Part shown: piece after piece, positions 42,601 through 54,500 of the stretch
Layout: each line of letters begins with the position of its first letter
Position numbering within the stretch: the stretch's first letter is position 1
Origin: Macrostomum hystrix
Lineage: Eukaryota > Animalia > Platyhelminthes
Assembly (NCBI GenBank): GCA_950097015.1
Contig: CATNEN010000024.1
Span: 5,394,001-5,458,000 of the forward strand
DNA: 64,000 nucleotides
Direction: 5' to 3'
Translations under genes and position numbers: made by a program
The notes under the pieces: model-generated
What the model was told of the DNA's origin: nothing
The model's database searches: none
Seen by the model: only the letters and a program-made list of their open reading frames with translations

Positions 42601-43702
42601 TGCTAATTCGTGCATAGGGGTTTGTGAGACACACTAGCGCTTACAGGAAAATCTGGCCATTGAATATCTCGACGTTCTGAAGAACCCGCGAGCTGATTCT
42701 TGTTTCTAAAGATGCGCAACAAAAAGTTGGCCCGTGTTCTTGGGTTTCGTGTGCTTGCGTTGCTCCGCTCGGGTGCAGCACAAATAATTGTCTAGGGGAG
42801 AAATCCCCCTTGGCAGTTCTACTGTAAAGTTAGTATAAAATGTTAATTAAAGTTAAAAAATGTCTACTAACCGTATGTTACCAAGGATCCTACTGCCGGC
42901 GATGACGTCAGCGATGCCGTGAGCAGCGCCGCTTCATCCACCTCTGGCCGCGACGCGGCCTTATCTCAAGACAGCGAATTCGACAGGTTCTTTGCCCGCC
43001 AGCTGGCCGGCCTCCTCACCGACTCGCTGGCCAGATTTTGCGGTCATCGCCTTGTCGACTGCACCGAGGATATGCTGGTGGATCTCAGCGAGTTGCTTTT
43101 CAACGAGTTGGCCTTCTTTCGACTAGTCAACAATTTGGATGTCAATGGCGACGATGATGAAGGCAATGACGCGGTCGGCGATAGACAAAATAAGGCCGCC
43201 GACCGATTCGCTGCCGTTGATGATACAGACAGCGTGGCCACGGAAGAAGCGTCTGGCGTCGAGAAAGGCGAAGGCAAGGGCGAAGAAAATGATGGCGACA
43301 GCGAGGAAGATAAGGGCGATGGTGAAGATGCTAATGGCGACGGCGAGGAAGATGAGGGCGATGGCGAGGATGCTAATGGCGACGGCGAGGAAGATGAGGG
43401 CGATGGCGAAGGCTCTGATGCTGGAACAGCGTCTGCCCAGCCAGTGGACGATTATTCCGACGATTTCGAAGAGGCAGCTAACAGTAGCGACGCAGAAAAG
43501 TTGCCTAAAGTTGACCAGATGCCCGACGGACAACAGCGAGACGGCGAAGGCGAGGGCGAGACTAAACAAGTAAAAAAAGTTTAGCCCTTGTTATTTATTT
43601 CGTTTTTTTTTCACAATTGACATCTTAATAAAAAATGACTAACGTAAATTGATTTTTCAGGTTTCCATGACAACGGTTGATAAGCCGAACGGAGATGCCT
43701 AG
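39602..43702 (+). CDS. PCM1: Pericentriolar material 1 (centriolar satellite scaffold); join(39602..40198,40437..42242,42886..43569,43661..43702), ~1040 aa
   Basis: ARLQQIRHYLRQA, LRNQRDLLRRMLQ, and PCM1 C-terminal blocks FDRLRESIYSEVAAVISQNESRPHFLVELFRELQLL and FFARQLAGLLTDSLARF..DLSELLFNELAFFRL. All introns phase 0. Confidence 0.9.
40270..40345 (-). mobile_element. tRNA-like SINE head fragment (PCM1 intron 1)
   Basis: Reverse strand reads TGTAGCCTAGTGG...GAGTTCGAATC, with the same A box as family B. Confidence 0.55.
42289..42824. mobile_element. 536-bp non-autonomous DNA element, 16-bp TIR, TAA flanks (PCM1 intron)
   Basis: CAGTAGGACTACCAAG...CTTGGCAGTTCTACTG (14/16 match), with TAA on both sides. 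Two further copies in the window. Confidence 0.8.
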
Positions 43703-44382
43703 GCAAATGATGCGAATGTAATGTTTTAGTTTTTAATTTATAATGTGCTTCTTGATTGTTTTTATAAATAAGCAAATTAATTTGACTGCTGCTAATAATT
43801 TCAGACAGATCTACCGATTATTTCTATTACGAGTACTTTTTTTATTTTTATGCCCAAAATTCACAAATTTGACACTTTTATATGCTGCAGCTCTTTTGTT
43901 GCTGCACTTTAAACAATTCCGTCCATCATATTCAAGTTTTTACTATTTAATTCGATAGACTAGACTTGGTCAGATTAAATTGAGTTCCATTCGAAACCCA
44001 CGTTAGTTAGTTAGTTTATTAAACAATTAAATGTTGCGGTCTGCTAGTCGGCCGGAAATTGTGTTTAAAATGGTCAAAAAATTATTGACTTATAGAAAGA
44101 CTTTGCTGTAAGTTTTTAGCTGTATCTATGCAGCTGCGACTGTGGTTATTTTGTAATAATTATCCCTACGCAAATATATTTTTACTACATTCCTAACTTT
44201 TATATTCCACTTTTTATGCCCCTCTTTCTTTCTTCGATGGCTCATTCACATATGCCTTATATTCATGTGCCTACACAGTAAGTGGCTAGTTTATGCACTT
44301 TTTCTAGAAGGATCTAGCGTGACATTGTGAGCTTTTTTGCATCATGTACGTGCTTTGATAACAAGGTCAAATAATCATCGGC

Positions 44383-44755
44383 GTTCCCCAACCCCACCCA
44401 TCTCAGTGTACATCCCAGGTCCCCAACCCCACCCATCTCAGTGTACATCCCAGGTCCCCAACCCCACCCATCTCAGTGTACATCCCAGGTCCCCAACCCC
44501 ACCCATTTCAGTGTACATCCCAGGTCCCCAACCCACACTTATTTCTTATCTCAGTGTACATCCGAGGTCCCCAACCCAACCCATTTCAGTGTACATCCCA
44601 GGTCCCCAACCCCACCCATCTCAGTTTACATCCCAGCCCCAACCCACACTTATCTCTTATCTCAGTGTACATTTGAGGTCCCCAACCCAACCCATTTCAG
44701 TGTACATCCCAGGTCCCCAACCCACACTCATCTCTTATCTCAGTGAACATCCGAG
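44383..44755. repeat. 35-bp C-rich minisatellite (CCCCAACCCCACCCATCTCAGTGTACATCCCAGGT), ~10 copies
   Basis: Directly visible. Confidence 0.93.
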
Positions 44756-45104
44756 TTCACAAGCATGGTTTTAAGCACACGGAAGTCTGTTGCAGTGTAG
44801 ATATCATATTTCACGTAGGGTGTTAGCATTAGGTCTTTATTCCTCTATCACTAAATGCCTCTATCTACCGATTTTTACAAAACTCTGCTGCCTTCTTTTC
44901 TATAATTTCTTCTTTTTTAGCCTGTCAAGTTTGATGTACGGATTGTAACTGTGAAGGAAGTTTAGAGCGAACAAACTTGTCATGCGCTTCGTGTCATTTT
45001 CCTTTTGTTCCCGCTTTTTGTTAACGCATTGTGCACGCCTTTATGGGTATCTCATGGAGATGCAGTGATTTTACTTATTCATTTGAAAATTTTACTGTAA
45101 TCAG

Positions 45105-48100
45105 GTATGCTCTCCTACCACTTCATATCCTCAGACGTAGTCTGTCAGCCTTCCATATCCTCAGGTATGGTCTGTCACCCTTCCATATCCTCAGATATGG
45201 TCTGTCAGCCTTCCATATCCTCAGGTATATAGACTGTTACCCTTCCATATCCTCAGGTATGGTCTGTCACCCTTCCATATCCTCAGATATGGTCTGTCAG
45301 CCTTCCATATCCTCAGGTATATAGACTGTTACCCTTCCATATCCTCAGGTATAGTCTGTTACCCTTCCATATCCTCAGGTATAGTCTGTTACCCTTCCAT
45401 ATCCTCAGGTATAGTCTGTTACCCTTCCATATCCTCAGGTATATAGTCTGTTACCCTTCCATATCCTCAGGTATAGTCTGTTACCCTTCCATATCCTCAG
45501 GTATAGTCTGTCACCCTTCCATATCCTCAGGTATAGTCTGTCACCCTTCCATATCCTCAGGTATGGTCTGTCACCCTTCCATATCCTCAGGTATGGTCTG
45601 TTACCCTTCCATATCCTCAGGTATATAGTCTGTTACCCTTCCATATCCTCAGGTATAGTCTGTTACCCTTCCATATCCTCAGGTATAGTCTGTCACCCTT
45701 CCATATCCTCAGGTATGGTCTGTCACCCTTCCATATCCTCAGGTATAGTCTGTTACCCTTCCATATCCTCAGGTATATAGTCTGTTACCCTTCCATATCC
45801 TCAGGTATATAGTCTGTTACCCTTCCATATCCTCAGGTATAGTCTGTTACCCTTCCATATCCTCAGGTATAGTCTGTCACCCTTCCATATCCTCAGGTAT
45901 AGTCTGTCACCCTTCCATATCCTCAGGTATGGTCTGTCACCCTTCCATATCCTCAGGTATGGTCTGTTACCCTTCCATATCCTCAGGTATATAGTCTGTT
46001 ACCCTTCCATATCCTCAGGTATAGTCTGTTACCCTTCCATATCCTCAGGTATAGTCTGTCACCCTTCCATATCCTCAGGTATGGTCTGTCACCCTTCCAT
46101 ATCCTCAGGTATGGTCTGTTACCCTTCCATATCCTCAGGTATATAGTCTGTTACCCTTCCATATCCTCAGGTATAGTCTGTTACCCTTCCATATCCTCAG
46201 GTATAGTCTGTTACCCTTCCATATCCTCAGGTATATAGTCTGTTACCCTTCCATATCCTCAGGTATAGTCTGTTACCCTTCCATATCCTCAGGTATAGTC
46301 TGTCACCCTTCCATATCCTCAGGTATAGTCTGTCACCCTTCCATATCCTCAGGTATGGTCTGTCACCCTTCCATATCCTCAGGTATGGTCTGTTACCCTT
46401 CCATATCCTCAGGTATATAGTCTGTTACCCTTCCATATCCTCAGGTATAGTCTGTTACCCTTCCATATCCTCAGGTATAGTCTGTTACCCTTCCATATCC
46501 TCAGGTATAGTCTGTTACCCTTCCATATCCTCAGGTATGGTCTGTTACCCTTCCATATCCTCAGGTATATAGTCTGTTACCCTTCCATATCCTCAGGTAT
46601 AGTCTGTTACCCTTCCATATCCTCAGGTATAGTCTCTTACCCTTCCATATCCTCAGGTATAGTCTGTTACCCTTCCATATCCTCAGGTATGGTCTGTTAC
46701 CCTTCCATATCCTCAGGTATATAGTCTGTTACCCTTCCATATCCTCAGGTATAGTCTGTTACCCTTCCATATCCTCAGGTATAGTCTGTCACCCTTCCAT
46801 ATCCTCAGGTATAGTCTGTCACCCTTCCATATCCTCAGGTATGGTCTGTCACCCTTCCATATCCTCAGGTATGGTCTGTTACCCTTCCATATCCTCAGGT
46901 ATATAGTCTGTTACCCTTCCATATCCTCAGGTATAGTCTGTTACCCTTCCATATCATCAGGTATAGTCTGTTACCCTTCCATATCCTCAGGTATAGTCTG
47001 TTACCCTTCCATATCCTCAGGTATGGTCTGTTACCCTTCCATATCCTCAGGTATATAGTCTGTTACCCTTCCATATCCTCAGGTATAGTCTGTTACCCTT
47101 CCATATCCTCAGGTATAGTCTCTTACCCTTCCATATCCTCAGGTATAGTCTGTTACCCTTCCATATCCTCAGGTATGGTCTGTTACCCTTCCATATCCTC
47201 AGGTATATAGTCTGTTACCCTTCCATATCCTCAGGTATAGTCTGTTACCCTTCCATATCCTCAGGTATAGTCTGTTACCCTTCCATATCCTCAGGTATAG
47301 TCTGTCACCCTTCCATATCCTCAGGTATAGTCTGTCACCCTTCCATATCCTCAGGTATGGTCTGTCACCCTTCCATATCCTCAGGTATGGTCTGTTACCC
47401 TTCCATATCCTCAGGTATATAGTCTGTTACCCTTCCATATCCTCAGGTATAGTCTGTTACCCTTCCATATCATCAGGTATAGTCTGTTACCCTTCCATAT
47501 CCTCAGGTATAGTCTGTTACCCTTCCATATCCTCAGGTATGGTCTGTTACCCTTCCATATCCTCAGGTATATAGTCTGTTACCCTTCCATATCCTCAGGT
47601 ATAGTCTGTTACCCTTCCATATCCTCAGGTATAGTCTCTTACCCTTCCATATCCTCAGGTATAGTCTGTTACCCTTCCATATCCTCAGGTATGGTCTGTT
47701 ACCCTTCCATATCCTCAGGTATATAGTCTGTTACCCTTCCATATCCTCAGGTATAGTCTGTTACCCTTCCATATCCTCAGGTATAGTCTGTTACCCTTCC
47801 ATATCCTCAGGTATGGTCTGTTACCCTTCCATATCCTCAGGTATATAGTCTGTTACCCTTCCATATCCTCAGGTATAGTCTGTTACCCTTCCATATCCTC
47901 AGGTATAGTCTGTTACCCTTCCATATCCTCAGGTATAGTCTGTTACCCTTCCATATCCTCAGGTATGGTCTGTTACCCTTCCATATCCTCAGGTATATAG
48001 TCTGTTACCCTTCCATATCCTCAGGTATAGTCTGTTACCCTTCCATATCCTCAGGTATAGTCTCTTACCCTTCCATATCCTCAGGTATAGTCTGTTACCC

Positions 48101-48575
48101 TTCCATCTCCTCAGGTATAGTCTGTTACCCTTCCATATCCCCAGGTATATAGTCTGTTACCCTTCCATATCCTCAGGTATATAGTCTGTTACCCTTCCAT
48201 ATCCTCAGGTATAGTCTGTTACCCTTCCATATCCTCAGGTATAGTCTGTCACCCTTCCATATCCTCAGGTATAGTCTGTTACCCTTCCATATCCTCAGGT
48301 ATAGTCTGTTACCCTTCCGTATCCTCAGGTATAGTCTCTTACCCTTCCATATCCTCAGGTATAGTCTGTTACCCTTCCATATCCTCAGGTATAGTCTCTT
48401 ACCCTTCCATATCCTCAGGTATAGTCTGTTACCCTTCCATATCCTCAGGTATAGTCTGTTACCCTTCCATATCCTCAGGTATAGTCTGTCACCCTTCCAT
48501 ATCCCCAGGTATATAGTCTGTTACCCTTCCATATCCTCAGGTATATAGTCTGTTACTCTTCCATATCCTCAAGTA
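45105..48575. repeat. 30/32-bp satellite (ACCCTTCCATATCCTCAGGTATAGTCTGTT), ~110-115 copies, with higher-order structure
   Basis: Directly visible 3.5-kb array. Confidence 0.98.
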
Positions 48576-48626
48576 TAACTCACCTGACCTGACCTCACGT
48601 CACCTGAACTGCATTCATTGTTCCAG

Positions 48627-51221
48627 CCGGCTCGCGGCAAGAGAGCTATCGATGACAGCCGTAGCGGCAGCGGCGATTGCGACGCCAAACGCCGTAAGCC
48701 AACAAGAACATTGTCGATTTCGCATGTTCCTACCCCGTACGGCGACAAGACATTGTTCTCCGGCTTGCTATTCGCTCTCTCTAAGCACGAGCCAGGTCGC
48801 GCCGCCCTTGCCGACTGCATTCGCCGAAACGGTGGCCAAGTTTTAAATAGAATTCAAGCAGTATCGGCTGACTATTTTGTACAGAGTTACAACTGCGAAT
48901 TCGATGACGCATTCGGTGAGGAAAGTGTCGGCGCCCACTCTGGCAACACCGTGCCAGCCTGCTACGTCACGGACTGCGCCGCTAGGGGCTCTCTGCTTGA
49001 TGTGCGAATGCATGCGCTTGGCTGGTCTGATGCCCGCGCTGGCGGGGATCAGAGGTGAGATCCACCTATACTGACAGTTCTTTTATGGTAAAGCAGAGAA
49101 GCGAAAAGCGACCAAGCTCTTACATCAAAGGTACCGAGTTCGAATCCTCAGTTGAACGGCAGCATTCTTTAGTCTAAATTTGCTCCTTACAAAGTAAAGC
49201 ACCAAGGCGCGATTGAAATCCTTGCTATAGTCAGAGATTCGCTGATATTAGACCGATATGGCAAAAGCCGTGGTCGTTTCGGGGTGTCTAATGGCAAAAA
49301 CCACGAAAATGGACACAATTTTTCTCCTCACAAAATTTCATCATGCAATCATATTAGCTATTTTTGGTGATAATATAAAAAAATTTAGTCTTTAGTCTTT
49401 CACGAATCTCATGCTTGCGAAATCTCGGCCTTGTACTAGCAGGACTTGAGCAGGCTCAGTTAAAAGCAGACAATATCCGTTGAAAGGCAGCTTAATCACT
49501 GGGTCTCGTCATTTCTACTGCCAGTTTATGAAGCAACAATACTCCTGATTATTGCTGGAGCATGAGAGTTTGAGAAGTTAATAAAAAGACAGGAACATTC
49601 TGTTAGCTGTAAATTATACTGTTATATCCTCTTGTTTCCTATTAAAAGAGTGAGAATGTATGAGAATGAGAATAAAATGTCTAGTCCTTGACATCGTTGC
49701 AGCAACTTTTCAGTTCTATTGGTCCTCAGGTTGACACAAGCCACATTTTTATTTTAGTTCGCGTGGTTAATTGTGCTTTGGTGTAAAAGCAAATCAGTAA
49801 ATTCTTTAACTGGCTTTCCTTACAACAAAAATTGGTCCCACCAGTGCCAGTCCTGACTTCGCAGACGACTCAGGTCTGGCCAGCACCTTGGCCTGCCTGC
49901 TGCCGGCTTGGCCGAGTCCCCTGCCCCAACTGCTAGAATCGCAGTGCCAGCCGCAGTGCTACGCCGAATTTCTCGCCTACCCGGATCGTTTAAGGCGAGG
50001 CGAATCGCCTCCTAATCTACGCCTGGTTCGCATTCGCCGATCTTGTATTAAAATTAAGGACAAGCCTAACTCAACTATTGATAAACGAGTTGAAGAAGAT
50101 TTGTGTGAGTTTCTGGAAGCCTCCACCGGCTGCGCCGTGACTTCAACTGAGTCGACCAATGAGCTAACTTGGCGCCCAGTTGGGTCGTCTCAGGGTCGCC
50201 TGCGCATCGGCCGCTACGACTATGATATTGGCCTGCGTAGGCGTGCTGGCCAGTATCAGCTGGAGGTTAGTGGTGCCACTTTAGAGTAATTCTAAAAACA
50301 CAGGATATATATGCACATCTTCAACAGTAGAAAGACCGGGGGGCATTTCAAATACCCTCTTTTATTTTTTTCTGTATCTTTATCGCCAAGAAAATCCGGA
50401 ACACGAACTAAAATTTTCCGCTCTATCCGATGAAACAACTTCCAGAATCACAAAACATCAACATCGTCGAGATATTCAACGATTCTCGTCGGGGTATCTG
50501 GTGGCAAAAACCACAAAATAGGCAAAAAATAATTCGTCACAAAATTTTATCTTTCACCGAAATCGGTCATTCGGTTTGGGAGCAATCAGGCAGTGGGTAT
50601 TTGAAATACACCACTGGTCTTTCTTACCCAGGGGGATATAGCGTGGTCTATCGTGGTCGCGATAGCCCTCCTAACCTGCAAGTTTGTTATGCCACCCTGC
50701 AGGCCATGGATCTCATAGCGGCCCTGACAGATTCTGTGCACAATCCGGCTACGGAATCAGCCACTCTTGCTCTCCTCACCGATTGTCACCTGTACGAGCG
50801 GGGCGTCGCTGAGCCAATCTACGGTAGAGGCACCGGCGATCGTTGCTGCGTAGTTTCTACCATAGAGAGCGGCGGCAGCGGGCGCCAGGTGTCCACGCAT
50901 CATCTGTTAGGCACATCGCTGCACGAACTATTGCACTGCTTCGGCTTGGATCACTGTCCCTATGCTAATTGTGTGCTGAATGCCTACTGCGATGACAGCG
51001 TGAAGTCGGGCAGTGCCGAAGCCAATCTGCCTTCGCTGTTAATCTGTCCAATAGATCTGCGAAAGCTATTCTCGGTAGTATGTTGCGCGCATTCAATATC
51101 AGACTCAAATAGCTTAGCTGGCTATTTTCAAAGACTGGCTAACCTACTGAAACGACTGGGATTACCGGACAATGCGCGACTGGCTGACAAAATGCGTCAA
51201 CGGACTGCCGCTCTGATCTAG
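48627..51221 (+). CDS. BRCT-domain + archaemetzincin (M54) zinc metalloprotease; join(<48627..49054,49845..50265,50703..51221); no in-frame ATG at the 5' acceptor
   Basis: BRCT-like LFSGLLF..LADCIRRNGGQV..CYVTDCAARGSLLD; AMZ N-motif WPSPLPQLLESQCQPQCYAEF; QLE|AMDLIAAL restored across the intron; zinc motif HELLHCFGLDHC-x4-C and ICPIDLRKL. Introns are GT-AG, phases 2 and 0. Confidence 0.8.
50329..50624. mobile_element. ~296-bp MITE in intron 2 of the BRCT-protease gene; related internal sequence at ~28105..28250 and ~49255..49345
   Basis: Imperfect ~30-bp TIRs AGAAAGACC..CATTTCAAATACCC / GGGTATTTGAAATAC..GGTCTTTCT. The internal AATTTTCCGCTCTATCCG..AACTTCCAGAAT segment recurs at ~28110. Confidence 0.7.
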
Positions 51222-51339
51222 TAGCTTTACTAGATTTCATAGAAAATGATTCAGTTTTTTATCAGCAGAAACTTATTTTTGAAATGTTTATCAAGTGCCT
51301 CTTTTTATGTTCTATTATTATGACTGACAGAATGTTTTT

Positions 51340-51350
51340 AATAAAATAAA
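51340..51350 (+). terminator. Probable polyadenylation signal of the BRCT-protease gene
   Basis: Overlapping AATAAA hexamers ~120 bp after the stop codon, followed by T-rich sequence. Confidence 0.6.
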
Positions 51351-51572
51351 ATAAAATATTATTTTTTTATACAAAAGTAACGGCTTTTTATAGTTTTATT
51401 ATTTATTCTTTGGTTAAGACTTAGTAGAGAAATACCTAAGAACAAAGTATTAATATGATACTAAGTGCCATATTAGTACATGCTTTATTGCTACATTTAA
51501 CCTAATTCATGCTCATAGTTCCAGTGTTAATCTACTGCTGCTTGCATAGTGCTTAAGCTAAAGGTCTAGTCC

Positions 51573-54500
51573 ATGCTGTCCCTGTCAGCTATGAATAGCA
51601 ATCAGCCCGTAGCCGCGCCGTCGCCCGCCTACTCGGCGACTAGTAGTGCAGCTGCAGCTCTGGCTATTCAGCATCCTCAATCGCCGGCCTCCGTTGGCGG
51701 CGCCTCCTCTGTGACGTCCTCCGACGCCTGTCTGTCCATTGTGCACTCGCTGATGTGTCACAGGCAGGGCGGCGAGTCCGAGGGCTTCAGCAAGAAGGCC
51801 ATCGAGTCGCTGGTGAAGAAACTGAAGGACAAGCGCGACGAATTGGACGCGTTGATTCAGGCTGTGACCAGCAACGGCAACCAGCCGACCAAGTGCGTCA
51901 CCATACCTAGGACTCTGGATGGCAGGCTGCAGGTCAGCTTTCAGTCCTTGCTTATCATTCTCATCTATCATTACTGCTTTGTTTACTCCTTGGAAACAGC
52001 TTGTCCGAACATCCTAGTCTTCGGACTGGTTTTTAGCACCTGGCAGCTCAGCCTGTTTAGCAGCTGACATGCCAGTCTGTTTATCACCTGACATCCCAGT
52101 CTGTTTAGCACCTGACATCCGAATCTGTTTAGCACCTGACATCCCAATCTGTTTAGCACCTGACATCCCAATCTGTTTAACACCTGACATCCCAGTTTGT
52201 TTAGCACCTGACAACCCAATCTGTTTAGCACCTGACAACCCAATCTGTTTAGCACCTGGCATCCCAGTCTGTTTAGCACCTGACATCCCAATCTGTTTAG
52301 CACCTGACATCCCAGTCTGTTTAACACCTGACATCCCAGTCTGTTTAGCACCTGACATCCCAGTCTGTTTAGCACCTGACATCCCAGTCTGTTTAGCACC
52401 TGGCAGCTCAGTCTGTTTATCACCTGACATCCCAGTCTGTTTAACACCTGACATCCCAGTCTGTTTAGCACTTGACATCCCAATCTGTTTAACACCTGAC
52501 ATCCCAGTCTGTTTAGCACCTGACATCCCAGTCTGTTTAGCACCTGACATCCCAATCTGTTTAGCACCTGACATCCGAATCTGTTTAGCACCTGACATCC
52601 GAATCTGTTTAGCACCTGACATCCCAATCTGTTTAGCACCTGACATCCCAGTCTGTTTAGCACCTGACATCCCAGTCTGTTTAGCACCTGACATCCGAAT
52701 CTGTTTAGCACCTGACATCCCAATCTGTTTAGCACCTGACATCCCAGTCTGTTTAACACCTGACATCCCAGTCTGTTTAGCACCTGACAACCCAATCTGT
52801 TTAGCACCTGGCATCCCAGTCTGTTTAGCACCTGACATCCCAGTCTGTTTAGCACCTGACATCCCAGTCTGTTTAACACCTGACATCCCAGTCTGTTTAG
52901 CACTTGACATCCCAATCTGTTTAACACCTGACATCCCAGTCTGTTTAGCACCTGACATCCCAGTCTGTTTAGCACCTGACATCCCAATCTGTTTAGCACC
53001 TGACATCCCAATCTGTTTAGCACCTGACATCCCAATCTGTTAACACCTTGAAAAAAGACCGTCTTTTTATTACCTGAAATCCGTCTTACTAAACCGCAAA
53101 CAGGTGGCCGGCCGCAAAGGCTTTCCGCACGTGGTCTACGCCAAAATCTGGCGCTGGCCAGATCTGCACAAGAACGAGTTGAAGCACACCCGCCAGTGCC
53201 AGTACGCCTTCGAGTTGAAGCAGGACGCAGTGTGCGTCAATCCCTACCACTACGAGCGGGTGGTCAGCCCCGGGCTGGAGTTCTCTTCGCTCAGCTTGGG
53301 CGATGACGACGACGCGGCCTCTCAGTCTGGCTTCGCTTCGCCTATGCTCCAGCAGCAGCAGCAGCAGCATCACATTCAGCAGCAGCCCCCGGCCCAGCCG
53401 CTTCCTCACCAGCTGCATCAACAGCAGCAGCAGCAGCAGCAGCAGTCAATGCTACAACAGCCTCAGCATCACATGCATCATCATCACGGCAACAATCAGC
53501 AGCATCACGGCAGCTGGGTTGCTCAGCCAATGCCGCCGCCCCAGCTTCATCAGCATCATCCGCATCAGCAACAGCAAGCACAGCAGCAGCATCCTCAGCT
53601 GCCACCGCTGTCAGTGGCCACTCCCTGGGCCGGGACAGGCGCCCTTGACCGCGGCAGCGTCTCCTGCCAGCAGCCGCTGACCCGGCAGCCGCACCCGGTC
53701 CACTGGTGCACCATCACTTATTATGAGCAGGCTGAGCAGGTTGGGGAAATGTTTAAAGTGCCCTACCAGCAGGCCAAGGTAATCATTGACGGCTACACCG
53801 ACCCGTCGTCCAGCCACCGCTTCTGCCTCGGCCAGCTGAGCAACGTGCACCGGAGCGAAGTGTCCGAGCGGGCTCGGCTGCACATCGGCAAAGGCGTCAA
53901 GCTCACGATGCGCGACGAAGGCAACGTCTGGCTGGAGGTCCTGTCCGACTATTCCGTCTTTGTTGGCACCTTCTACCTGGACAGAGAGGCCGGCCGTCCG
54001 CCTGGCGATGTTGTGCACAAGATCTATCCTGGCACCCACATCAAGGTGAGACTGCATTGTGCGAACCCTTCTCTTACCAGCGAATGGTGTACTTGCTCAC
54101 TGTCTGCTGATCACCATTCACCATTCACGCCACTTTCTATTCACTTGCCAGTCACTCTCACCGCACCATTCACTCGCCAGTCACTCTCACCGCATTCATC
54201 ACTCGCCAGTCACTCTCACCGCACTATTCACTCGCCAGTCACTCTCACCGCACTATTCACTCGCCAGTCACTCCCACCGCACTATTCACTCGCCAGTCAC
54301 TCCCACCGCACTATTCACTCGCCAGTCACTCTCACCGCACTATTCACTCGCCAGTCACTCCTACCGCACTATTCACTCGCCAGTCACTCTCACCGCACTA
54401 TTCACTCGCCAGTCACTCCCACCGCACTATTCACTCGCCAGTCACTCCCACCGCATTCATCACTCACCAGTCACTCTCACCGCACTATTCACTCGCCAGT

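What the first reader, a model, noticed from the sequence alone, without database searches (positions are those of the whole stretch)
48600..48660. ORF that begins at a splice acceptor with no start codon: candidate spliced-leader-donated AUG
Seen: branch-like CTGAC motifs and TTGTTCCAG| at 48626 are followed in phase 0 by CCG GCT CGC (PARGKRAIDD...). The first in-frame ATG lies ~380 nt later, at the end of the BRCT domain, and I found no phase-0 coding exon upstream. Established: flatworm spliced leaders end in AUG, which can serve as the initiator Met. Inference: SL addition yields M-PARGKR..., making BRCT translation dependent on trans-splicing. This depends on the flatworm assignment.
Basis: partly seen in the sequence, partly recalled or inferred. 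Interest (0 to 1): 0.75.

Follow-up and report, generated by a model that had tools for sequence, protein, structure and literature searches.

The report
Start codon borrowed from spliced leader
In this Macrostomum flatworm, a gene encoding a BRCT domain fused to an archaemetzincin-like protease has no start codon of its own before the BRCT domain and most likely takes it from the AUG that ends the trans-spliced leader, which is a known flatworm habit rather than a new mechanism.

Summary
TTGTTCCAG| ends at 48626, and an ORF opens in phase 0 at 48627. The first in-frame ATG is at 49008, just after the BRCT_2 match at residues 42-127.

Spliced RNA contigs from two studies show one three-exon mRNA: 48627-49054, 49845-50265 and 50703-51221 (stop). 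It has 455 codons, open from its first base. Two of these contigs stop matching the genome exactly at the acceptor and carry 21-22 further letters. No contig covers 48580-48625. The tool did not print those letters, so their identity as spliced leader (SL) is inferred.

Supporting evidence:
- The organism is a Macrostomum; the best hit is M. lignano at 62% identity.
- The published Macrostomum SL is identical in three species and ends in ATG.
- The acceptor fits the published trans-acceptor motif [T/C]TNCAG.
- No upstream ATG exon with a good donor lies within 5 kb.
- Four out-of-frame ATGs precede 49008.
- The BRCT frame is under purifying selection (pN 0.23, pS 0.58).
- Two of three M. lignano copies have the same ATG-less, phase-0 design.

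The mechanism has been known since Cheng et al. 2006, and this scan has already found it at other genes in this genome. Confidence is about 0.8 and interest is low.

The parts
45101..48577 (+). Minisatellite of 30-nt units, about 114 copies, with a 152-nt higher-order period. It fills most of the putative outron directly upstream of the acceptor. Every unit carries a weak donor-like CAG|GTATAG, and some variant units carry ATG|GTCTGT.
   Evidence: Tandem Repeats Finder; sequence; donor enumeration.
48584..48593 (+). Two overlapping-in-series branch-point-like CTGAC motifs, with the A 39 and 34 nt upstream of the AG.
   Evidence: Read from the sequence; the function is inferred.
48612..48626 (+). 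3' splice acceptor TCATTGTTCCAG|. Its last six letters, TTCCAG, fit the M. lignano SL trans-acceptor motif [T/C]TNCAG.
   Evidence: Motif from PMC8629364. RNA contigs begin to match the genome at 48626.
48627..49054 (+). Exon 1 (428 nt). The ORF is open from its first base in phase 0. The exon ends in phase 2 at AG|gtgag.
   Evidence: Spliced contigs X4 record 16, X5 record 22 and X2 record 8.
48627..48749 (+). ATG-less N-terminal extension, residues 1-41. It is basic and resembles a nuclear localisation signal (GKR...AKRRKP), and it is poorly conserved in sequence.
   Evidence: The nuclear localisation reading is inference.
48750..49007 (+). BRCT domain, residues 42-127.
   Evidence: Pfam BRCT_2 E 4e-07, above the gathering score. 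pN 0.23 against pS 0.58 versus M. lignano.
49008..49010 (+). First in-frame ATG (residue 128), lying after the BRCT domain. It is preceded by four out-of-frame ATGs at 48652, 48724, 48904 and 49000.
49055..49844 (+). Intron 1 (GT..AG). Contigs from other individuals lack 266 nt of it (49132-49397).
   Evidence: Joints table.
49845..50265 (+). Exon 2 (421 nt). No Pfam match.
50266..50702 (+). Intron 2 (GT..AG). It holds a dispersed repeat at about 50381-50517 that is very abundant in RNA contigs.
   Evidence: depth table and loose ends.
50703..51221 (+). Exon 3 coding part, ending at stop 51219-51221. It is an archaemetzincin-like metalloprotease region with the motif HELLHCFGLDHC. The mRNA continues to at least 51259-51317.
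   Evidence: Pfam Peptidase_M54 E 0.0024, below the cut-off. PDB 2x7m archaemetzincin E 0.0023 with the M. lignano orthologue.

Best explanation
The pre-mRNA of this gene is trans-spliced at the acceptor TTCCAG|48627 to the Macrostomum spliced leader (...CTCAATTTATTGCATG). The leader's last three letters, AUG, then sit directly in phase with CCG GCT CGC. This gives a 456-residue protein M-PARGKRAIDD..., made of a basic nuclear-localisation-like stretch, a BRCT domain and an archaemetzincin-like metalloprotease.

Without the leader, the first AUGs on the mRNA are four out-of-frame ones. The first in-frame AUG (residue 128) would skip the BRCT domain entirely.

Shown: the exon boundary, the three-exon mRNA, the open phase-0 frame, the lack of an own ATG, selection on the BRCT frame, and a foreign 21-22 letter 5' piece on the mRNA. 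Inferred: that this piece is the SL, and that ribosomes start at its AUG.
For: (1): X4 record 16 (1429 nt) joins 48626-49052, 49843-50263 and 50701-51259 across GT..AG introns and has 22 more letters 5' of 48626. X2 record 8, from another study, matches 48626-48812 with no differences and has 21 more letters 5' of 48626. Depth in bin 48580-48679 equals the contig depth times the fraction of the bin from 48626 onward (15.6 = 0.54 x 28.9), so nothing covers 48580-48625.

(2) Both contigs match G48626 but not A48625. That is what a leader ending in ...ATG would give.

(3) A retained length of 22-23 leader letters is below the 30 that a k=31 assembly keeps of a unique or two-isoform cis exon. It is about what is expected when one leader is joined to thousands of different exons, since the graph branches until 7-9 exon letters make the word unique. 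This is my inference.

(4) The SL is identical in three Macrostomum species and ends in ATG. About 20-30% of genes are trans-spliced.

(5) TTCCAG fits the trans-acceptor motif [T/C]TNCAG.

(6): the 455 codons are open from the first exon base. In-frame Met occurs only at residues 128, 285 and 447. Four out-of-frame ATGs come first.

(7): in the BRCT codons pN is 0.23 against pS 0.58 versus M. lignano.

(8): there are no phase-0 ATG exons with a GTRAG or GTAHG donor in 43585-48626.

(9): M. lignano copies g4 and g3 are annotated as 'partial'. They begin at the aligned junction, in phase 0, with no own ATG. That annotation cut transcripts at SL signals.

(10) SL-AUG initiation is established in flatworms by Cheng et al. 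2006, as cited in PMC9851317 and PMC12582326.
Against: They were therefore never compared with the SL. All data are contigs, not reads, so neither the share of trans-spliced molecules nor the true 5' end is known.

A very short cis first exon would also give a short, fixed-length foreign piece. Variant minisatellite units offer ATG|GTCTGT, an exon end that would mimic the leader.

In the M. lignano assembly the two letters before the junction read TG, not AG. M. lignano copy g2 has its own in-frame ATG. There is no ribosome or peptide evidence.
Confidence: 0.8

Rival explanations
1. A short cis-spliced 5' exon supplies the ATG or just a 5' UTR, and the 21-22 foreign letters are that exon. It would lie upstream of the minisatellite, or inside it at a variant unit ending ...GGTATG|GTCTGT.
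For: The letters were not seen. One search lists 28 phase-0 ATG..|GT candidates whose exon ends in [not A]G, most of them ATG|GTCTGT in variant minisatellite units. An earlier follow-up in this genome reports one claimed SL case that turned out to have a tiny upstream ATG exon (s1-316733; unchecked).
Against: None of the candidates has a GTRAG or GTAHG donor. A cis exon should leave 30 or more letters on a k=31 contig of depth 29, not 22. Two runs of very different depth (28.9 and 5.3) stop at 22 and 21 letters. No contig covers any genomic sequence just upstream. The M. lignano annotation starts the transcript at the same junction.
Confidence: 0.1
2. The mRNA is trans-spliced or not, but translation starts elsewhere. 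It would start either at the first in-frame AUG (residue 128), giving the protease part alone, or at a near-cognate codon in the N-terminal stretch.
For: An in-frame ATG exists at 49008. The N-terminal 41 residues are barely conserved (pN 0.50, pS saturated). M. lignano copy g2 starts at its own ATG only 12 codons before the BRCT domain.
Against: The BRCT codons are under purifying selection in the protein frame, so they are translated. Four out-of-frame ATGs with 40-80 codon ORFs lie before 49008. If the SL is present, its AUG is the first AUG on the mRNA and is in frame.
Confidence: 0.06
3. Exon 1 is an internal exon of a longer transcript from the upstream PCM1 gene (read-through or fusion), so the ATG is PCM1's.
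For: PCM1 is on the same strand about 4.8 kb upstream. That is about 1 kb after tandem repeats are subtracted.
Against: PCM1's frame ends in a stop at 43582-43584. A contig entering a unique PCM1 exon would keep at least 30 letters and probably run on. M. lignano annotates separate genes.
Confidence: 0.02

Closest known systems
[quoted passage not shown]
   Same: The leader ends in AUG. The acceptor is directly followed in phase 0 by an ORF with no ATG of its own before a conserved domain. Trans-splicing therefore creates the start codon.
   Different: The known cases are in Schistosoma and Echinococcus, whereas this is a free-living Macrostomum. For that genus the papers I read state only the possibility (PMC10468722 supplement). 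No translation data exist for this gene.
SL trans-splicing in Macrostomum lignano, M. cliftonense and M. hystrix (PMC8629364, PMC5730564, PMC10468722)
   Same: Same genus-wide leader, same acceptor motif [T/C]TNCAG, and a repeat-rich outron or intergenic region.
   Different: Those papers give genome-wide counts and do not discuss this gene. 'Mlig026686' is found in no paper or held supplement.
M. lignano orthologues Mlig026686.g4/.g3/.g2 (PAA78596.1, PAA56316.1, PAA64602.1; UniRef A0A1I8HLM7, A0A1I8G8J8)
   Same: BRCT plus archaemetzincin-like architecture, three coding exons with the same phase at the end of exon 1, and the same neighbours (PCM1 upstream, SMAD4 downstream). Copies g4 and g3 are ATG-less and in phase 0 at the aligned junction.
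   Different: About 60% amino-acid identity. Copy g2 lacks 7 nt, has its own ATG (MPAKRRGQ...), and puts the leader AUG out of frame. The assembly shows CTG or ATG instead of CAG before the junction.

Membership tests
SL-donated initiator AUG (flatworm slORF) | The organism makes an SL RNA whose leader ends in AUG | tested here: met
   The organism is placed in Macrostomum. The published leader of three Macrostomum species is identical and ends in ATG. There is no SL gene in this window. Earlier scan notes report SL RNA genes elsewhere in this genome (unchecked by me).
SL-donated initiator AUG (flatworm slORF) | The leader is joined to the mRNA exactly at the acceptor in front of the ORF | tested here: inconclusive
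   Two contigs from two studies leave the genome at 48626 with 21-22 foreign 5' letters, and nothing covers 48580-48625. The letters themselves were not shown, so identity with the SL is inferred.
SL-donated initiator AUG (flatworm slORF) | The leader AUG is in frame with the ORF, with no stop between | tested here: met
   455 codons are open from the first exon base in phase 0.
SL-donated initiator AUG (flatworm slORF) | The recipient lacks an own in-frame ATG upstream of conserved protein sequence | tested here: met
   The first in-frame ATG is residue 128, after the BRCT domain. BRCT pN/pS is about 0.4 uncorrected, and about 0.25 after Jukes-Cantor correction. No good cis ATG exon lies upstream.
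SL-donated initiator AUG (flatworm slORF) | Ribosomes initiate at the leader AUG | not testable with these tools
   This needs ribosome profiling, N-terminal proteomics or a reporter.
BRCT domain | Match to the family profile above the curated cut-off | tested here: met
   PF16589 BRCT_2, 30.7 bits against a cut-off of 27.3, residues 42-127. The M. lignano orthologue scores 27.5 bits.
Archaemetzincin (peptidase M54) | Match to the family profile above the curated cut-off, plus an HExxHxxGxxH zinc site | tested here: inconclusive
   PF07998 scores 18.3 bits, below the 24.4 cut-off, and only around the zinc site. PDB 2x7m archaemetzincin matches at E 0.0023. HELLHCFGLDH is present. No fold was predicted.

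The most novel reading that the evidence does not exclude
The source of the start codon is evolutionarily labile in this gene. In the window species and in M. lignano copies g4 and g3, the BRCT-bearing (probably nuclear) form exists only after trans-splicing. In copy g2 a 7-nt difference brings a genomic ATG into frame and throws the leader AUG out of frame. Trans-splicing would then be a gate for making a lineage-restricted BRCT-archaemetzincin fusion protease. The fraction of trans-spliced against otherwise processed mRNA could set the ratio of the full-length form to the BRCT-less form starting at Met128.
Probability: 0.25. Interest if true: 0.4.

Novelty: new member of a known kind. Interest (0 to 1): 0.2.

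Why it matters
The practical value is for annotation. Gene models in Macrostomum, as in other flatworms, come out as '5'-partial' or get truncated to an internal Met when the leader's ATG is trimmed. Here that would delete the whole BRCT domain from the predicted protein.

Biologically it adds one well-documented example in a free-living flatworm to a mechanism known mainly from parasites. It does not open a new question. This scan has already reported several such cases in the same genome.

Tried and rejected
(1) Reading the foreign letters.

(2) Finding transcript-derived proteins that carry leader-encoded residues. Two word searches found only the M. lignano cluster: with the exon-3 ORF and with the M. 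lignano orthologue. Its seven members are all NCBI or UniRef. Exact look-ups of the UniRef models found no contig.

(3) SL gene or SL-like exon in the window. There was no match to the 35-nt leader at up to 3 mismatches, none to its last 15 nt at up to 2 mismatches, and no Rfam hit in 43500-51600.

(4) Published trans-splicing status of the M. lignano orthologue. The gene id occurs in no paper or held supplement.

(5) Joined protein. Exons were searched one by one by reference. The joined reading frame was only counted for stops and Met positions inside a local script, without printing it.

(6) Not done. I did not run the large representative protein search, structure prediction or a metagenome pattern scan. 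They bear on the fusion protein rather than on the start codon, or had a negligible chance of a hit.

Rejected readings: the bacterial-style TTG start at 48618 listed is irrelevant in a eukaryote. PCM1 read-through is treated under the rival explanations.

Full report
**Observation.** The window reads ...CTGACCTGACctcacgtcacctgaactgcattcattgttccag|CCGGCTCGCGGCAAGAGAGCTATCGATGAC... The AG ends at 48626 and the first exon base is 48627. Two CTGAC motifs place a candidate branch A 39 and 34 nt before the AG. Phase 0 from 48627 reads PARGKRAIDDSRSGSGDCDAKRRKPTRT... and stays open to a GT donor at 49055. In the same frame upstream there are stops within 14 codons and no ATG. Pfam BRCT_2 matches residues 42-127 (E 4e-07, 30.7 bits, cut-off 27.3). 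The first in-frame ATG is at 49008, residue 128, which is 381 nt after the acceptor.

**Surroundings.**
- Immediately upstream, at 45101-48577, lies a 3.5-kb minisatellite of 30-nt units.
- Further upstream on the same strand are a PCM1 gene (PCM1_C, E 1.6e-38 and 1.7e-22) ending at about 43584, and a TFIIF-beta gene.
- Downstream is a SMAD gene (MH1).

**Organism.** A word search with the exon-3 ORF gave one hit, M. lignano PAA78596.1 (456 aa, 62% identity, BRCT_2, 'partial'). Its locus has the same neighbours, PCM1 upstream and an MH1/MH2 SMAD downstream. The window therefore comes from a Macrostomum other than M. lignano. Earlier scan notes name M. hystrix; I did not check this.

**RNA evidence.** Runs X4 and X5 (one study) and X1 and X2 (another study) were laid on 48580-51560.
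- X4 record 16 (1429 nt) and X5 record 22 (1396 nt) are spliced. They cover 48626/48638-49052, 49843-50263 and 50701-51259, with GT..AG at both gaps after the stated +2 shift.
- The gene is therefore one three-exon mRNA: 48627-49054, 49845-50265 and 50703-51221 (stop). The BRCT exon and the archaemetzincin-like region belong to the same message.
- A local count shows 455 codons with no internal stop and in-frame Met only at residues 128, 285 and 447.
- X4 record 16 has 22 letters beyond the piece that ends at 48626. X2 record 8 matches 48626-48812 without a difference and has 21 letters before 48626.
- The depth in the first bin is exactly the contig depth times the fraction of the bin from 48626 (or 48638) onward, in X4, X5 and X2. 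No contig covers 48580-48625, although intron 1 does have low-depth contigs.
- So the mature RNA carries a short non-local 5' piece joined exactly at the predicted acceptor.
- The loose-ends table was truncated to entries from an intron-2 repeat. I never saw the letters.

**Is the foreign piece the spliced leader?** This is inference from several lines of evidence.
- The leader of M. lignano is CGGTCTCTTACTGCGAAGACTCAATTTATTGCATG (PMC8629364). [quoted passage not shown]
- About 20% of genes in those two species, and up to 30% in M. lignano, are trans-spliced.
- Both contigs match G48626 but not A48625, as expected for ...ATG|CCG.
- The top motif at M. lignano trans-acceptors is [T/C]TNCAG at the junction. 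The window has TTCCAG.
- Length argument (mine). In a k=31 assembly, a unique cis exon, or one shared by two isoforms, leaves at least 30 letters on the contig. A leader joined to thousands of exons branches until the exon prefix is unique, at about 7-9 letters for several thousand acceptors. That leaves 22-24 leader letters.
- The observed 23 and 22 letters (counting the matched G), in runs of depth 28.9 and 5.3, fit that model.
- Between 43585 and 48626 there are 46 phase-0 ATG...|GT candidates. None has a GTRAG or GTAHG donor. The only leader mimics are variant minisatellite units ending ATG|GTCTGT.

**Must the region before Met128 be translated?** Yes.
- Against the M. lignano orthologue, the 83 aligned BRCT codons give pN 0.23 and pS 0.58. 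Jukes-Cantor corrected values are 0.28 and 1.12. That is purifying selection on this frame.
- The N-terminal 41 codons are saturated and poorly alignable, but they are basic in both species.
- On the mature mRNA, four out-of-frame ATGs precede 49008, at 48652, 48724, 48904 and 49000. Each opens a 40-80 codon ORF.
- A scanning ribosome on a leaderless mRNA would be diverted by these ATGs. With the leader, the first AUG is the leader's, and it is in frame.

**Comparison with M. lignano.**
- The three genomic copies align to the window so that the window's CCAG| corresponds to GCTG| (g4, g3) or GATG| (g2), followed by AAAAGCCGCCGC.
- In g4 and g3 the annotated 'partial' CDS begins at (g4) or within three bases of (g3) that junction, in phase 0. 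It is open and has no ATG until the Met inside the first BRCT strand (FSGMSF).
- This is the same design as in the window.
- g2 lacks 7 nt and has its own ATG (MPAKRRGQTATTHVFSG, also UniRef A0A1I8HLM7). Phase 0 from the junction is then out of frame.
- The Mlig_3_7 annotation cut transcripts at mapped SL signals. The assembly was polished with RNA-seq reads as well as DNA reads (PMC5730564).
- UniRef models from another assembly read Q-F-L-Q|K across the junction, that is CA(A/G) where Mlig_3_7 has CTG or ATG.
- I therefore suspect that the true sequence is TTTTTGCAG|, and that leader-bearing RNA reads (...GCATG) pulled the last letters towards the leader during polishing. This is a hypothesis only.

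**Mechanism and its rivals.** The best explanation, at about 0.8, is SL trans-splicing at 48627 with the leader's AUG as initiator. It gives a 456-residue protein with a basic stretch, a BRCT domain and an archaemetzincin-like region. The rivals are:
- a tiny cis 5' exon (about 0.1);
- initiation at Met128 or at a near-cognate codon (about 0.06);
- PCM1 read-through (about 0.02).

**Known or new?**
- The flatworm SL's 3'-terminal AUG as initiator Met was shown by Cheng et al. 2006. [quoted passage not shown]
- PMC12582326 restates the feature for all reported flatworm leaders.
- Earlier follow-ups of this scan report the same thing for TOP3A, cardiolipin synthase, CHMP6, an M3A peptidase and others in this same genome (unchecked by me).
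- This is therefore a new example of a known kind.

**Limits.** Contigs only; the loose letters were not seen; there is no translation evidence. Exons were searched separately, and the joined frame was only counted locally.

Noticed in passing
window 48627-51221: Spliced RNA contigs show that the BRCT exon and the archaemetzincin-like region (HELLHCFGLDHC) are one mRNA and one ORF. The only relatives found by two word searches are the M. lignano copies. The protease match is weak: Pfam M54 is below its cut-off and PDB 2x7m matches at E 0.0023. This bears on the separate note s1-351196.
   Followed up: partly
window 45101-48577; L001 5410-5911: The region just upstream of the acceptor is filled by a tandem array in both species, but the units are unrelated: 30 nt x 114 here, and a roughly 16-nt GTTTAGGCCATAGACA array in M. 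lignano. After subtracting tandem repeats, the distance from PCM1 to this gene is about 1 kb. That is at the published repeat-adjusted operon threshold for M. lignano (PMC8629364).
   Followed up: partly
L001 5998-6000, L002 2997-2999, L003 2995-2997: The three letters before the M. lignano junction read CTG, ATG and CTG in Mlig_3_7, but CA(A/G) in UniRef models from another assembly. The upstream TCAATTTTTG also resembles the leader's TCAATTTATTG. This is possibly an artefact of polishing that assembly with leader-bearing RNA-seq reads.
   Followed up: partly
L002 about 3095 versus L001 6069-6078: A 7-nt indel among M. lignano copies switches the BRCT frame between 'own ATG' (g2) and 'phase 0 from the junction, no ATG' (g4, g3).
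   Followed up: partly
window 50381-50517 (intron 2) and 49283-49340 (intron 1): A short dispersed repeat (...GGTGGCAAAAACCAC...CACAAAATTT...) reaches summed contig depths of about 2400 in RNA-derived runs, with dozens of different flanks. It is probably an abundant transcribed MITE/SINE-like element. There is no Rfam match.
   Followed up: partly
window 49132-49397: Contigs from two studies (X5, X1) skip 266 nt of intron 1 with TA..TC ends. This is not a splice and looks like an insertion/deletion polymorphism. An 11-nt inverted repeat (AGTCTAAATTT / AAATTTAGTCT) and a 10-nt direct repeat (TCTTTAGTCT) lie near its ends.
   Followed up: partly
window 49035-49256: A low-depth contig (X4 record 17) runs through the exon 1 donor into intron 1, so unspliced precursor is present. 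No contig covers the outron side of the acceptor at 48580-48625.
   Followed up: no
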